A DNA stretch of 63,473 nucleotides, counting the filler, from Hausera hauseri (lineage: Eukaryota): assembly GCA_046269625.1 (NCBI GenBank). It is 12 parts of 12 records of this genome, joined end to end, with 100 filler letters (N's around TTAATTAATTAA, not from the genome) between each part and the next. Parts side by side here need not be neighbours in the genome. Positions count along the whole stretch, not along the records: positions 56,641 to 63,473 come from JBJURY010060662.1; 11 more parts are not named here. One strand, written 5' to 3'. Positions 57,093 through 63,473 of this stretch are shown in pieces. Every line of letters starts with the position of its first letter. Position 1 is the first letter of the stretch. The notes beneath the pieces are model-generated. The model was not told the DNA's origin. It was given only the letters and a program-made list of their open reading frames with translations, and made no database searches. The position numbers were made by a program, and so were the translations under genes.

Positions 57093-57362
57093 CTAGAAAC
57101 CAATATTACAATTCTGCAAATTTGGTCCAAGTTGTATTAACAAAATGAAGATACAAACTTATTAACTCAGATATCAGAACAGTCTTATTGCATGTATCAG
57201 AAACACAGAGAGCTTCAAAAGTGACATTTAAGGTGTTGCAGACATTTTAATGTGTAGCTGCTTCGTTAACACACGTGTAGTTTGTAAAATGAAAGGAAAG
57301 ATTTGTTTGACTGAAAATTACAACATAGAGGTTAATGAGGGATTCCTTTTTAAAATTGTATT

Positions 57363-59981
57363 TTAGTATTTATATCTTGTAATGCAATTCCTCCATGCGT
57401 TTTCTCTTGCATTAGTGTCTGGTATTTCTGAACACGAAACGTCTAATATTTTTATTAATTTCTGTGTCGCCTGTGGGATGTTGACGATATTCCCTATGAG
57501 AATAATTTTAGAGATAATAAATCTGTTGACAACAATACTCCTACCGAATATTGTTGTTGCTTTGTATTTGTATTTTTCTATCATGCTGTTTATTTTACTG
57601 ACTAGTTTTTTCCACATGTTTGTGTCTATTGTTGTAGGTGTGGTTGTATATGTAATGCCGTAGATTGTCATTTTGTTAACTTGCAGTAACTGGAAAGGGA
57701 AGTCGCTTTTATTCGACCATTTCCCAATTCCCATTATGTGTGATTTCTGTATGTTTAGTTTAGACCCACTGGCCTGGCCAAACTCTGTGAATGTGTCTAG
57801 AATCTTTTGTATGGAGCTAGTGTTTGTGGGGAAGAAAACTGTGTCATCTGCATAGGCTAGCAGCTTCCTGTCTCCACTCCCTGGAACGAAAGTTCCTTTT
57901 ATCTGAGTGTCCTGCCTGATCTTTTCTAAGACTAATTCAAGTGTTAATATGTACAGCAGTGGGGATAAGGGGCACCCCTGTCTCACTGACCTGCTAAGTG
58001 TGAAAGTCTCTGTGAGAGTGTGGTTGATCAAGATTCTGCTCTCGGGATTTTTATAAATTATTTCAATCCAAGATCTGAAATGTTCTCCTATATTGCATGC
58101 TTTTAATGTTTTATGTAGGAAAGAGTGCGATACCCGGTCAAAAGCCTTTTCTTGATCTAGTGAAAGTATGGCTGATTGAATTTGTCTGTCATGTGCGTAA
58201 GTGATGATGTCTCTTAAGAAATGTGTGTGTCTGCTTATGTTCCTGGTTGGTACGCTATTCTGTTGATCTTCGTGGACTAAGTTTTGCAAGTATGGCCTGA
58301 GTTTATGTGTGAGTGTCTTTGTTAATATTTTGTAGTCTGTGTTAAGCAAGGAGATTGGTCTGTAGTTTTTCATAAGTGTTTTGTCTGCATTGTCTTTAGG
58401 GATTAGTGTAATGTATGACTGTGTGAAGCTTTGTGGCAGTTGTTTTCTTTGGAAGGCTTCATTTAGGACTTTCAGCAACAGAGGACCCAGGACCGGGAAG
58501 AAATGGGCATAAAACTCTGCCGTAAGTCCGTCCGGCCCGGGTGACTTGTTTTTTTGAAAGCTCGCTATTGCTTTTTGCAGCTCGTCTAGTGTCAAACTTT
58601 GGTCTAATGTTTGTCTGTCTTCGTTTGATAGTCGTTTTGCGTATTGCAGATATTTGTCTTGTATTCCGTCACTTGTTTCTTCTTTGGTGTATAATTGTTT
58701 ATAGAAATTTAGAAAAGCATTGCAAATTTCAGTATTTTCTGTCTGTAAGTTACCGTCTTTGTCGAATATTTCATGGATTTGTCTGTTTCGTTGTATGTTC
58801 TGTTCTACTCCTAGGTACTGCTTGCTTGGAATTTCTTGTACTATTGTGTCTAATTTGGTTCTCAGTAGTGCTCCCTGATATTTGCGTTGTTTGTATGTAT
58901 CTAATTCATCCTCTAGAGTGTTGATGTGTGGGTCTGCAGAGTCTGTTATTTTAGCTAACCTGATTGCTTCTTCTAGTAATTTTTCCTGCCGTTTGAAATG
59001 TCTGCTTATGTGTGTAGCCAGTGTTTGTGTCCTATCTTTTATCGAGTTTTTTAACAAGTCCCAGAATTCTAATAAATTGGATTCTGGTGTGTCTTGCGTG
59101 TATTCTTGTATAAGTGTTGTGATCTGTTGTATGTAGAAATCGTTTTCCAGCAGTTTATTGTTAAATTTCCAATGTGGAGATCGTCTAGATGTTTGCTGTT
59201 GTTGTTGCATGTTCAGTATTGTGAGAATAGCTTTGTGGTCTGTGAACTTTAGTGTGTTTTTTATGTGTTGTGTTTTGCAAATTGTGTAGTTATCCGATGC
59301 ATAGATTCTGTCTATTCGTGATGCATGTTTCGTGTATGGGTTTGTTTTGTCTGTGTATGTATATTCTTGTCCTGTTGGGTGTGTTTTTCTGTATGTATCG
59401 GTCAAGTTGTGTTCGTCGATGATTGTTTGTAGTGTCTGTAACTGTGACATGTCCTCCTTATCTATCTTCCTAGTCTGGGAGTGAATAAATCTACCTGTTA
59501 GGTCTAGATTAGACAAAACACAGTTAAAATCCCCTCCCAGTATAATGTTTGTTCCTTTGTAGTGTGAGGTGAGTTTATTTGAGAGGTTTCCAAAAAAGGA
59601 AGGTTGACTGATTTTTTTTGCTGGGGCATAAATGTTAACTAGTGTGTGTCTATCTTGTTTATTGTGTTTGCTCTGTATCTGTATAATTGCTATCCTACCC
59701 TCTCCGTCTCTATCTCTACTAACAATGTCCCACTCATCTGATATTTGTAATATTGCTACGCCTGTGTATTTGTTACCTATGCTAAACAGTCCTTGTTTCA
59801 ATCCTAGTTTGCTGATCAAATGTTTGGCATAATTTTCACTGACAATTTTTGTCTCTTGCAAAAGGATGAAATCCGGGTTATGGGATTTAATTAGTTCTTC
59901 TACGTGTTTTAATTTGTGTTTCAGTCCAAAAATGTTGACTGACAAGATACTTAAACTCTGTAAACTATGTTGTACAGCCAT
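57363..59981 (-). CDS. ORF2: AP endonuclease plus reverse transcriptase
   Basis: SVNIFGL, LQETK, NIYAP, GGDFN, SRIDR, TDHKA; KSPGPDG, YRPISLLNTDYK, LDQEKAFDRV, VRQGCPLSP, YADD. First ATG at 59981; frameshift near 57460. Confidence 0.95.
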   Translation of the reverse strand: MAVQHSLQSLSILSVNIFGLKHKLKHVEELIKSHNPDFILLQETKIVSENYAKHLISKLGLKQGLFSIGNKYTGVAILQISDEWDIVSRDRDGEGRIAIIQIQSKHNKQDRHTLVNIYAPAKKISQPSFFGNLSNKLTSHYKGTNIILGGDFNCVLSNLDLTGRFIHSQTRKIDKEDMSQLQTLQTIIDEHNLTDTYRKTHPTGQEYTYTDKTNPYTKHASRIDRIYASDNYTICKTQHIKNTLKFTDHKAILTILNMQQQQQTSRRSPHWKFNNKLLENDFYIQQITTLIQEYTQDTPESNLLEFWDLLKNSIKDRTQTLATHISRHFKRQEKLLEEAIRLAKITDSADPHINTLEDELDTYKQRKYQGALLRTKLDTIVQEIPSKQYLGVEQNIQRNRQIHEIFDKDGNLQTENTEICNAFLNFYKQLYTKEETSDGIQDKYLQYAKRLSNEDRQTLDQSLTLDELQKAIASFQKNKSPGPDGLTAEFYAHFFPVLGPLLLKVLNEAFQRKQLPQSFTQSYITLIPKDNADKTLMKNYRPISLLNTDYKILTKTLTHKLRPYLQNLVHEDQQNSVPTRNISRHTHFLRDIITYAHDRQIQSAILSLDQEKAFDRVSHSFLHKTLKACNIGEHFRSWIEIIYKNPESRILINHTLTETFTLSRSVRQGCPLSPLLYILTLELVLEKIRQDTQIKGTFVPGSGDRKLLAYADDTVFFPTNTSSIQKILDTFTEFGQASGSKLNIQKSHIMGIGKWSNKSDFPFQLLQVNKMTIYGITYTTTPTTIDTNMWKKLVSKINSMIEKYKYKATTIFGRSIVVNRFIISKIILIGNIVNIPQATQKLIKILDVSCSEIPDTNARENAWRNCITRYKY

Positions 59982-60139
59982 GGTGAATATAAAAATGGTG
60001 AAATCTAGAGACTGGTTGGTTATACAATTGCTATACTGATAATTGAAAAACACTACAATACGTACTTCATATACAAGCAATTTGTTATTCGTCACAAAAC
60101 ACAGTTTGTTAAGTTATCGTATTCTAATTGGTTTTTACC

Positions 60140-61972: not shown

Positions 61973-63263
61973 CCAAATTTATATGTCTCCACAATCCCTA
62001 TCCAGGAACTGGTACTAAGTTCTTGTTTGACGGAAAGAGCTACAAATAACGTGTTTTCTGGTATGCGAGTTTTAACAAGAGTGATGTTATCTTTTCGTAT
62101 CTCGATCAAACGAAAAAGCTGGCGTGGTTCGCCTCTCATTACGTCATTTCTTCTCCTGCCAGCTATTCTCACTCAGACATTATAGCACCGATGTCAGCTA
62201 ACACGCTCGCAACCGGTGTTATTTCTTTCTGTCAACCGGTACCACAATAACAATATCGGAAAGACTTTGTTCTAACGATTTCTTGGCCAGACTCGTGTTA
62301 CGTTTGTAAAAGCTGTCTTTACTATCTGGTGGTCGGTTTTATTGCCCTAGACGGATTTTTCCCAAAGATTCATTGTTTAATTCTCAACCTTTTCATATTT
62401 TAGTCCGATTTTTCATCATATCAATTTTCCTGTGACCCTCTGTAATGTATACTGTGTTCTTGAAATAATTTAGACACGCGTCGAGAGCATTTCGAAACGG
62501 GGCTATTGCCAAGGAAGACCCGAGTGACAAAACAGAACATAAGCTAGCATATAACACTCAAGCCTATAAAAAGTTATTTCAAGTTCTGCATCAATGGTCT
62601 TCAAATTTTGAGCGAAAAATAAAAATCAAGAGTATTCGCACACGCTTATATTTTTTATTGGTATTGTCCTCATAAACGATTAAAATAGTAATAATTCGTG
62701 AACAAAGAAGCACGATTTATTATTACTTGTCAAGTTTAATTAATGAAAAGGCTAGCGCTACATTTCACTTACAAGTCTTGCCATAACAGGATAGTAGAAG
62801 AAACTTTGAATTTGAGTACTATTTCTTCATCGGCCAGTTTCTGTAACTGGAATGTTTAAGATAAACCCCAGACAGTCTTTGGGAAAAAAGCTGTTAAAAT
62901 CAAATGATAAACAATATATTCTTACCAACCATTGCCGAAACCAGGACACGAACTACGGCGCAAACACGAAGATGACAACTCAATGAGCATTTGCGACGGC
63001 TAAATTAACAGACAACATGCAGACAGACAGAATACCAGACAGCCTAGTGGCAAGAAAAAGATGGACAGACGGAGTGAAGGAGGTTTGCAAGAACAATGGA
63101 ACACCGATTGTAGTGACAAGTTTGGGAGAAGCAATACAAAGGCAGATTTAAACCGCAGATAAAAGATAACTACAAGGGTATAATGTAATTTATAAAAAAA
63201 AAATCCATCATGACATGACCACTGAACTGCAATATTTCTAACCGCTCATGAGTATTGTACACA

Positions 63264-63378
63264 TACCCTACAGCGTAGGGTTTGAAAAATAGTCTATAGA
63301 CTCATTATAATGCTCCTCTCCACGGAAATCTTTAGTAAAAGGCGAAAGATTTATACGCTGTGAAGAGAAACCAGAGTA
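63264..63378 (-). ncRNA. U5: U5 spliceosomal snRNA, full length
   Basis: Invariant loop 1 GCCUUUUAC in stem AAAUCUUU/AAAGAUUU, then CCGUGGAGAGGA, Sm-like site AUUUUUC and 3' hairpin ACCCUACGCUGUAGGGU; about 115 nt. Confidence 0.95.
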
Positions 63379-63473
63379 GCTATTCAGGGCTCGGCTTTAT
63401 GTGGCATAGTAATTCTCGTGGTATATTCTTTGGCTGTTAAACAGCTGTATATTTTACTAAGAAAATTTACAAA

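What the first reader, a model, noticed from the sequence alone, without database searches (positions are those of the whole stretch)
57352..63473. Candidate U5 snRNA-targeting non-LTR retrotransposon
Seen: the 5' end of a two-ORF L1/Tx1-type element joins a U5 gene in sense orientation at the base of stem-loop 1 (...ACTAAAGATTT|TATGTG, where the intact copy 2035 bp away reads ...GATTT|CCGTGG). The interrupted copy keeps its genomic upstream flank, so it is a real U5 locus and not an RNA-level chimera. ORF1 and about 840 codons of ORF2 are intact while most other elements in the window are heavily decayed, so the insertion looks young. Established: Tx1-clade elements with AP endonucleases often target multicopy RNA genes (Keno targets U2; the RLE-type Utopia also targets U2). 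Inference: this family is specific for U5 arrays. I cannot confirm whether a U5-specific family has been described. Caveat: this is one copy, and its 3' junction is missing.
Basis: partly seen in the sequence, partly recalled or inferred. Interest (0 to 1): 0.9.

Follow-up and report, generated by a model that had tools for sequence, protein, structure and literature searches.

The report
LINE retrotransposon inserted in U5 genes
A two-gene jumping element of the L1/Tx1 type sits inside one copy of a tandemly repeated U5 spliceosomal RNA gene, and its family and distant relatives repeatedly land in U5, so it is a gene-targeting retrotransposon of a known kind with a rarely documented target.

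Summary
On the minus strand, an intact U5 gene (63265-63379) is followed 2035 bp later by a U5 copy that stops after nt 54 (61344-61291). That copy keeps the same upstream flank. It runs straight into a 35-nt leader, an intact ORF1 (371 aa, one CCHC knuckle) and an ORF2 with AP-endonuclease and reverse-transcriptase domains.

The targeting idea holds up.
- In the best-matching public run, an exact contig carries the element-U5 joint at about the same depth as the element's own 5' region.
- A second, diverged 5' end in that run is joined to U5 at nt 16.
- Relatives in other hosts lie in U5 at loop 1 (nt 35-41) with both junctions visible. Others lie in U2 (at the published Keno site), U1 and 5S genes.

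- ORF2 is not intact. It has two frameshifts and loses all homology at about 57352, roughly 250 codons short.
- There it abuts a low-copy flank with a xanthine-dehydrogenase-like exon. This is a rearrangement or an assembly mosaic.
- The family's own 3' junction was never seen.

U5 is already listed as a Tx1 target in a 2015 figure legend, so this is a new member of a known kind.

The parts
63265..63379 (-). Intact U5 snRNA gene (115 nt). Loop 1 is nt 36-46. An Sm-site-like AUUUUUC and a 3' hairpin are present.
   Evidence: Rfam RF00020, 94.7 bits against a gathering score of 40, full model 1-117
63380..63473 (-). Upstream (promoter-side) flank of the intact U5, cut by the end of the piece
   Evidence: Aligns with 61345-61438 with few differences; 77 nt are identical
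61345..63264 (-). Spacer of the U5 tandem array (unit 2035 bp). Its first 94 nt are the conserved upstream flank of the interrupted copy. It contains a (CTAA/CTGA)n microsatellite at 61916-61981.
   Evidence: Direct repeats D2/D3 at spacing 2035-2036. Exact X1 contigs at depth 83-123, against about 1.5 for the left flank
61291..61344 (-). Interrupted U5 gene, nt 1-54: 5' stem, loop 1 and the 3' strand of the upper helix
   Evidence: The joint at 61290/61291 is carried by an exact X1 contig, 60761-61319, depth 44
61256..61290 (-). Element 5' leader, 35 nt, between U5 nt 54 and the ORF1 ATG
   Evidence: The U5-inserted relative L001 has a 33-nt leader
60140..61255 (-). ORF1, 371 aa, open. One CCHC zinc knuckle near residue 190, then a charged low-complexity tail.
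   Evidence: No Pfam or PDB match. Same layout (one CCHC at aa 185-240) in the ORF1s of relatives. Nearest Atlas clusters are mollusc and CCHC proteins (lead only)
57363..59981 (-). ORF2 open frame, 872 codons. AP endonuclease at 59235-59945, reverse transcriptase at 57729-58403 (AYADDT motif).
   Evidence: Pfam PF03372 (4e-13) and PF00078 (5e-37). Aligns over residues 9-835 with human L1 ORF2p 8uw3, E 9e-85, with the endonuclease catalytic positions N, E, Y, D-N, D, D-H conserved. 51-54% identical to 1122-1125 aa relatives
57352..57470 (-). Decayed 3' terminal stretch of the element: two frameshifts, then the end of all homology (about 250 codons and the 3' UTR are missing)
   Evidence: tblastn of relatives' C-termini hits three different frames at 57605-57465, 57465-57415 and 57442-57356, and nothing further left. 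X1 contigs diverge from the reference before 57414, and all differ from it at 57512, 57523 and 57628
56641..57351 (-). Not part of the element: a low-copy flank with an exon-like piece of a xanthine dehydrogenase/aldehyde oxidase gene (56951-57130) and tRNA-like SINE heads (56641-56830)
   Evidence: Pfam PF20256 MoCoBD_2, E 1.1e-9. X1 depth 1.4-1.8. A contig of organism B matches 57231-57350 exactly and then continues differently

Best explanation
This is a copy of a young, multicopy Tx1-type (L1-superfamily, AP-endonuclease) non-LTR retrotransposon family that inserts preferentially, perhaps specifically, into U5 snRNA genes, in the same orientation as the gene. The host is probably a mollusc.

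Proposed mechanism:
- The ORF2 endonuclease nicks the antisense strand of the U5 gene in or next to the segment that encodes the invariant loop 1. This step is inferred from relatives whose 3' junctions lie at U5 nt 35-41.
- The nick primes reverse transcription of the element RNA (target-primed reverse transcription).
- The second-strand break sets the 5' joint. Here it lies after nt 54, which would give a 14-19 bp target duplication if the 3' joint is where the relatives have it. In a second subfamily it lies after nt 16, which would be a target deletion.
- With only 35 nt between U5 nt 54 and the ORF1 start codon, full-length copies are probably transcribed from the U5 gene's own upstream promoter as a U5(1-54)-element fusion RNA (inferred). 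A cDNA end carrying that leader could anneal to the next U5 target and reproduce the same 5' joint.
- The host tolerates the insertions because U5 is a tandem multicopy array.

This particular copy is dead at its 3' side: frameshifts, loss of the C-terminal ~250 codons and tail, and a junction to unrelated low-copy DNA.
For: Shown:
- A real U5 locus is interrupted after nt 54, with its upstream flank conserved.
- APE and RT domains have conserved catalytic motifs and are collinear with L1 ORF2p. ORF1 has a CCHC knuckle.
- In run X1 the joint contig (60761-61319, no differences) has depth 44. Exact contigs of the element's 5' half have depth 32-62, the U5 spacer 83-123 and the left flank about 1.5.
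- A second contig joins a diverged version of the same leader to U5 at 61329 (U5 nt 16), depth 4.4.
- Together these two account for about 49 of about 54 depth units at the element's 5' end. No X1 loose end with another 5' flank is among those listed.

Relatives:
- L001 is a full-length element between U5 nt 39 and nt 41, with a 33-nt leader.
- L016 lies between U5 nt 35 and nt 35/36.
- L019 and L078 have 3' joints at nt 35-37, and L050 has a 5' joint at about nt 34.
- L081 sits in U2 with a 10-bp duplication, and its 3' joint is at the published Keno site. L093 is in U2; L082, L083 and L002 are in U1; L094 and L005 are in 5S (Keno site from PMC6136364).
- In the ORF2 tree the U5-inserted elements fall in three separate, well-supported lineages.

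Literature: Tx1-clade elements are typically target-specific. Co-transcription with the target has been proposed to reinforce targeting (PMC4494074).
Against: - The 3' junction of this family was not seen. The only copy in hand is cut at about 57352 and joined to a xanthine-dehydrogenase-like flank, not to U5.
- The joint contig reaches only 29 nt into U5, two short of the read tool's 31-nt rule for bridging. X1 may be the sample the assembly came from, so it is not independent support.
- A shared joint at high depth could come from amplification of one occupied array unit rather than from repeated insertion.
- No DNA context could be fetched for the element's own clade (P0001-P0029).
- In organism D, a contig matching the leader up to 61285 continues into non-U5 sequence.
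- Many diverged family contigs exist in X1 (406 were laid), and their locations are unknown.
- Within the L016 clade, several subfamilies have other fixed flanks. Target switching is therefore common, and U5 use by relatives does not prove it for this family.
- The endonuclease nick site and promoter read-through are inferences.
Confidence: 0.78

Rival explanations
1. A single chance insertion of an ordinary, non-specific LINE hit one U5 unit, and that unit was later multiplied by unequal crossing-over or concerted evolution of the array. The high depth of the joint would then reflect array dynamics, not targeting.
For: The dominant joint is one identical sequence at depth 44. U5 units form a homogenised tandem array, with 77 nt of flank 100% identical between neighbours. 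The contigs of the element's 5' half are identical over hundreds of bases, as concerted evolution would produce.
Against: A second 5' end with indels in the leader is joined to a different U5 position, nt 16. Relatives in three lineages and at least two other hosts are inserted in U5 at loop 1, and sister elements are in U1, U2 and 5S at fixed sites. Target specificity is the rule in this group (PMC4494074).
Confidence: 0.12
2. An RNA-level chimera or carried leader. U5 nt 1-54 was added to the element by template switching of the reverse transcriptase onto U5 snRNA (as in the L1-U6/U5 chimeric pseudogenes of mammals), or it is a 5'-transduced leader. It would then travel with the element to arbitrary sites.
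For: L1-type enzymes make snRNA-LINE chimeras (PMC4494074 discussion). The read graph breaks between 61319 and 61349, so for the other ~30 copies the link from the joint to the U5 upstream flank is not shown.
Against: In the copy in hand, the non-transcribed upstream flank of U5 continues for all 94 comparable nt, and the copy sits at the array period of 2035 bp. In L001 and L016 both halves of U5 flank the element, so those are insertions into the gene.
Confidence: 0.05
3. An assembly artefact: the 5' joint between the element and U5 does not exist in the genome.
For: The piece is a short contig made of repeats. Its 3' ~350 nt look like a different, unique variant of the element compared with the abundant contigs, so at least one mosaic join in this contig is plausible.
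Against: An exact Logan contig of an independent assembly method runs from ORF1 through the leader and 29 nt into U5. It stops where a k=31 graph must branch into shared U5 sequence, and its depth equals that of the element. A variant joint to U5 also exists.
Confidence: 0.03

Closest known systems
U5-targeting Tx1 family or families recorded in Repbase and shown in Fig. 3 of Kojima 2015 (PMC4494074; the legend lists 'U5, U5 snRNA' among targets of Tx1 families with known targets)
   Same: A Tx1-type APE LINE with U5 snRNA genes as its target.
   Different: The family name, host and insertion site are not given in the text I could read, so identity or relatedness could not be tested. Later in 2015 the same author wrote that only Keno, Utopia, Dada-U1 and Dada-U6 had been reported for snRNA genes (PMC4640811). 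The U5 case is therefore essentially undescribed in the open literature.
Keno (Tx1 clade, specific for U2 snRNA genes; Kojima and Fujiwara 2004)
   Same: A two-ORF APE+RT LINE inserted in sense orientation at a fixed, highly conserved position of a Pol II snRNA gene in a multicopy array. A relative fetched here (L081) uses exactly the published Keno 3' site in U2.
   Different: The target is U5, not U2. In the ORF2 tree the window element is in a different clade (28 sequences, support 100) from the U2/U1/U5 cluster that holds L081.
Mutsu and other 5S-rRNA-specific Tx1 elements
   Same: Same element type and strategy. The relatives L005 and L094 end in 5S genes.
   Different: A different target gene and a different clade.
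Human LINE-1 (ORF2p structures 8uw3, 8sxt, 9hdo)
   Same: ORF2 is collinear over residues 9-835, with the same endonuclease and RT catalytic motifs. Integration presumably occurs by target-primed reverse transcription.
   Different: L1 has only a loose TTTT/AA preference and an internal promoter in a long 5' UTR, and its ORF1p is of the coiled-coil/RRM/CTD type. Here the leader is 35 nt, ORF1 has a CCHC knuckle, and insertions are gene-specific.
Utopia (restriction-like-endonuclease LINE in U2) and Dada DNA transposons (U1, U6, tRNA)
   Same: The same ecological strategy: hiding in multicopy small-RNA genes, with precise 3' and variable 5' boundaries (PMC4640811).
   Different: Unrelated enzymes: a PD-(D/E)xK endonuclease or a DDE transposase instead of an AP endonuclease.
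L1-mediated snRNA-LINE chimeric retropseudogenes (U6-L1, U5-L1)
   Same: An snRNA sequence fused in sense to the 5' side of LINE sequence.
   Different: Those start at the snRNA's first nucleotide at random genomic sites. Here the gene's upstream flank and array position are kept.

Membership tests
Tx1-type / L1-superfamily APE non-LTR retrotransposon | N-terminal apurinic/apyrimidinic-type endonuclease with catalytic residues | tested here: met
   PF03372 at residues 13-249. N, E, Y, D-N, D and D-H positions align with the L1 endonuclease
Tx1-type / L1-superfamily APE non-LTR retrotransposon | L1-like reverse transcriptase with Y/F-ADD, collinear with L1 ORF2p | tested here: met
   PF00078 at residues 527-751, AYADDT motif. 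Residues 9-835 align with 8uw3, E 9e-85
Tx1-type / L1-superfamily APE non-LTR retrotransposon | C-terminal cysteine-rich / zf-RVT segment after the RT | tested here: not met
   Absent from this copy because it is cut at about 57352. Present in full-length relatives (PF13966 in P0004, P0012 and others). This is a defect of the copy, not of the family.
Tx1-type / L1-superfamily APE non-LTR retrotransposon | Upstream ORF1 encoding a nucleic-acid-binding protein | tested here: met
   Open 371-aa ORF with a CX2CX4HX4C knuckle. Same layout in relatives. The fold was not tested.
Tx1-type / L1-superfamily APE non-LTR retrotransposon | Groups with reference Tx1/Keno sequences, not with L1 proper, in an RT phylogeny | not testable with these tools
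   No reference Repbase sequences were available. Indirect support only: the nearest sequences with visible flanks are target-specific elements in U2 (Keno site), U1, U5 and 5S
U5 snRNA gene-specific retrotransposon | Sense-oriented insertion inside a genuine U5 gene | tested here: met
U5 snRNA gene-specific retrotransposon | Recurrent, independent insertions into U5 | tested here: met
   Two different 5' joints (U5 nt 54 at depth 44; U5 nt 16 at depth 4.4, with a diverged leader) in run X1. This rests on assembled contigs of one run.
U5 snRNA gene-specific retrotransposon | Fixed 3' junction (tail followed by U5) shared by copies | not testable with these tools
Seen only in relatives (L001, L016, L019, L078)
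U5 snRNA gene-specific retrotransposon | Few or no copies outside U5 genes | tested here: inconclusive
   No alternative 5' flank is listed for X1, but 213 loose ends were not shown. Organism D shows a non-U5 continuation at 61285
Keno (U2-specific) | Insertion at U2 nt 37 with 3' flank TCTGTTCTTATCAG... | tested here: not met
   The target here is U5. The Keno site is seen only in relatives L081 and L093
Template-switch snRNA-LINE chimeric pseudogene | The snRNA part begins at its first nucleotide with no gene flank, at a non-snRNA locus | tested here: not met
   The upstream flank is conserved over all 94 comparable nt, and the array period is kept

The most novel reading that the evidence does not exclude
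U5 loop 1 may be a recurrent landing site that at least three separate Tx1-type lineages have come to use. This family may occupy a large share (perhaps a third to a half, judging by contig depth) of a U5 array. It may have no promoter of its own and be expressed from the snRNA promoter as a U5(1-54)-leader fusion RNA, whose leader also guides homology-based 5' joining at the next U5 gene. That would be a Pol II snRNA-promoter counterpart of R2's co-transcription with rRNA.
Probability: 0.25. Interest if true: 0.6.

Novelty: new member of a known kind. Interest (0 to 1): 0.45.

Why it matters
Target-specific LINEs are natural examples of programmable, safe-harbour insertion, and few snRNA-targeting families are documented in the open literature. 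I found U5 as a target only in one figure legend.

This locus, with the relatives collected here, shows three things:
- Related endonucleases have switched among U1, U2, U5 and 5S genes.
- They always hit the most conserved loop-coding segments.
- U5 loop 1 has been used by three lineages.

That gives a compact comparative set for asking which endonuclease or ORF features set the target. It also raises the question of whether an snRNA promoter can drive a 5-kb protein-coding transcript. For genome annotation, it warns that U5 arrays in this (probably molluscan) genome are partly occupied by the element.

Tried and rejected
No DNA context could be fetched for the closest relatives (P0001, P0002, P0011 and others).
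The viral-contig scan found nothing.
- Rfam covariance models miss split snRNA halves. The gathering scan of 20 loci and the E-value scan of 11 loci did not report the U5 pieces in L001 and L016 that blastn and direct reading show. One call failed on size.
- The Rfam E-value scan of the piece gave only the two U5 hits. No HDV-like or other ribozyme was detected at the 5' joint. ARAGORN found no tRNA.
- ORF1 has no Pfam match, no meaningful PDB match and no phmmer similarity to the ORF1s of the fetched loci.
- The first tree run with the mixture model timed out. The trees reported are quick LG+G4 searches, so only strongly supported groupings are used.
- The U2 Keno motif and the U1 5'-end motif were first searched before the MAG-derived loci were fetched.
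- A rescue of the missing 3' junction inside the piece was rejected: the U5 3' half occurs only in the intact copy.
- Literature searches for a described U5-specific family found only the 2015 figure legend.

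
Full report
**What is in the sequence.** All features lie on the minus strand of the piece 56641-63473.
- Rfam finds a complete U5 snRNA gene at 63265-63379 (94.7 bits). It finds a weaker hit at 61246-61344, of which only U5 nt 1-54 (61344-61291) is real U5.
- The two copies are 2035 bp apart. They share U5 nt 1-54 and all 94 nt of upstream flank that the piece contains, with 77 nt identical and 72 nt at 96%.
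In the Rfam structure line, nt 36-46 are loop 1 and nt 47-54 are the 3' strand of the upper helix.
- The 3' half of U5 occurs only in the intact copy.

**The element.**
- After U5 nt 54 come a 35-nt leader and then ORF1 (61255-60140; 371 aa, open). ORF1 has one CX2CX4HX4C knuckle and a charged tail.
- A 158-nt spacer follows, then ORF2 from the ATG at 59981.
- ORF2 has an AP-endonuclease domain (residues 13-249) and a reverse transcriptase (residues 527-751, AYADDT).
- Residues 9-835 align with human L1 ORF2p (8uw3, E 9e-85), with the endonuclease catalytic positions conserved.
- ORF1 has no Pfam or PDB match. The ORF1s of relatives have the same one-knuckle layout. The nearest Atlas clusters are mollusc and CCHC proteins, which is a lead only.

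**The 3' side is damaged.**
- The closest proteins are 51-54% identical and 1122-1125 aa long. The only named one is from the land snail Bradybaena similaris.
- Our frame is collinear with them to about residue 839. Homology then continues in two other frames (57465-57415 and 57442-57356) and ends near 57352.
- About 250 codons, including the cysteine-rich zf-RVT part, the 3' UTR and the tail are therefore absent.
- To the left lies low-copy DNA with an exon-like match to the molybdopterin-binding domain of xanthine dehydrogenase/aldehyde oxidase (PF20256, E 1e-9) and tRNA-like SINE heads.
- A non-LTR element cannot be 3'-truncated by its own integration. This junction is therefore a later rearrangement or an assembly mosaic.
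- The mosaic reading has some support. In run X1, every contig differs from the reference at 57512, 57523 and 57628, and contigs diverge from it before 57414. By contrast, 59613-61319 is identical to abundant contigs.

**Public reads.** The tool offered four runs, all held as Logan contigs.
- X1 holds 76% of the sampled words and may be the source sample.
- Exact contigs cover 59613-59929 (depth 32), 59993-60255 (depth 37), 60439-60790 (depth 62) and 60761-61319 (depth 44). U5 spacer contigs have depth 83-123. The left flank has depth about 1.5.
- The contig 60761-61319 crosses the joint and stops 29 nt into U5. That is where a k=31 graph must branch into sequence shared with intact U5 genes. 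It is two letters short of the tool's 31-nt bridging rule, so I call it near-bridging.
- A second contig (depth 4.4) joins a diverged version of the same leader, differing by indels, directly to 61329, which is U5 nt 16. This is a second, different junction with U5.
- At the leader, total depth is about 54, and about 49 of that is joined to U5. No X1 loose end with another 5' flank is among those listed, but 213 loose ends were not shown.
- Organisms B and D show intact U5 genes. In D, a contig matching the leader up to 61285 continues into non-U5 sequence.
- Depths of contigs are not copy numbers, so the ratios are rough.

**Relatives elsewhere.** I fetched 80 metagenome loci and 38 loci from host contamination in bacterial bins, several of them from lucinid-clam symbionts.
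- blastn with the window's U5 found U5 pieces in sense orientation next to five of the elements.
- L001 is a full-length element (ORF1 392 aa, ORF2 1151 aa, 33-nt leader). It lies between U5 nt 39 and nt 41 and has an A-rich tail.
- L016 lies between U5 nt 35 and nt 35/36. L019 and L078 have 3' joints at nt 35-37, and L050 has a 5' joint at about nt 34.
- An Rfam E-value scan and direct reading show L081 in U2 with a 10-bp target duplication. Its 3' flank begins TCTGTTCTTATCAG, the site published for Keno.
- L093 is in U2. L082 and L083 are in U1, and L002 has the U1 5' end at its 5' side. L094 and L005 are in 5S.
- In the L016 clade, other subfamilies have other fixed 3' flanks.

**Tree.** In the ORF2 tree (quick search, LG+G4):
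- The window element sits in a 28-sequence clade (support 100) made only of database proteins without accessible DNA.
- The U1/U2/U5 cluster (L001, L002, L081-L083, L093), the L016/L019 clade and the 5S clade are each separate from it.
- U5 association therefore appears in three lineages, and targets have switched often.

**Interpretation.**
- The element is a Tx1-type, target-specific LINE that uses U5 genes.
- The mechanism is target-primed reverse transcription after a nick in or near the loop-1-coding DNA. The nick position is inferred from relatives.
- If this family's 3' joint lies at nt 35-41, the joint after nt 54 implies a 14-19 bp duplication and the nt-16 joint implies a deletion.
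- The 33-35-nt leaders of the two full-length U5 insertions leave little room for an internal promoter. Read-through from the U5 promoter is therefore the likely source of element RNA.
- Such an RNA would carry a U5 leader that could anneal to the next target and reproduce the same 5' joint. This idea has been proposed for other target-specific elements (PMC4494074). These two steps are inference.

**Rivals.**
- Amplification of one occupied array unit would explain the depth of the main joint. It would not explain the second joint or the behaviour of relatives.
- A template-switch chimera is excluded for this copy by the conserved upstream flank.
- Misassembly of the 5' joint is unlikely given the exact independent contig.

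**Novelty.**
- Tx1-clade targeting of U2 (Keno), 5S, tRNA, microsatellites and transposons is established.
- The legend of Fig. 3 in Kojima 2015 lists U5 snRNA among targets of Tx1 families with known targets.
- A later 2015 paper names only Keno, Utopia, Dada-U1 and Dada-U6 as reported snRNA-gene targeters. Further searches found no description of a U5-specific family.
- I therefore rate it a new member of a known kind, of moderate interest.

Noticed in passing
L082:78-105 and 6015-6094; L083:7283-7406; L002:103-127: Relatives inserted in U1 snRNA genes. The 5' flank ends near U1 nt 25, and the 3' flank resumes near nt 33-45, around the stem-loop I loop. They come from two different sources. 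In the open literature I searched, only the DNA transposon Dada-U1 is named as U1-targeting (PMC4640811).
   Followed up: partly
L001, L081, L082, L083, L093 (3' ends): Elements with different snRNA targets (U5, U2, U1) share a conserved 3' terminal motif of the form AATAAA..TTTATGAAAAA.AAAAAA just before the target sequence. Target switches therefore happened with the tail kept.
   Followed up: partly
window 56951-57130 (-): Exon-like segment preceded by an AG acceptor. It encodes a molybdopterin-binding motif of xanthine dehydrogenase/aldehyde oxidase (PF20256, E 1e-9). It lies only about 220 bp from the point where the element breaks off. Its 36-nt core matches several contigs in related organisms, probably paralogues.
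   Followed up: partly
window 56641-56830 (-): Two stretches with tRNA-like box-A motifs, probably heads of tRNA-derived SINEs. ARAGORN and Rfam report no tRNA there.
   Followed up: no
window 57231-57350: A 570-nt contig of organism B matches these 120 nt exactly and stops matching at 57350, one base before the element begins. The flank therefore exists without the element junction in a close relative.
   Followed up: no
window 61916-61981: (CTAA)n/(CTGA)n microsatellite inside the U5 array spacer. Logan contigs break there.
   Followed up: no
L018:7362-7400; L024:1438-1530; L035:681-770: Head-to-tail tandem copies in the L016/L019 clade. A tail hairpin motif (TTATTCGCTGG.CGAATAAACAAAAA) is followed by a few target bases and then the 5' end of the next element.
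   Followed up: no
L081:1354-4164: An extra open reading frame of 936 aa with no Pfam match lies between ORF1 and ORF2 of the U2-inserted element. It may be a nested insertion or an additional gene.
   Followed up: partly
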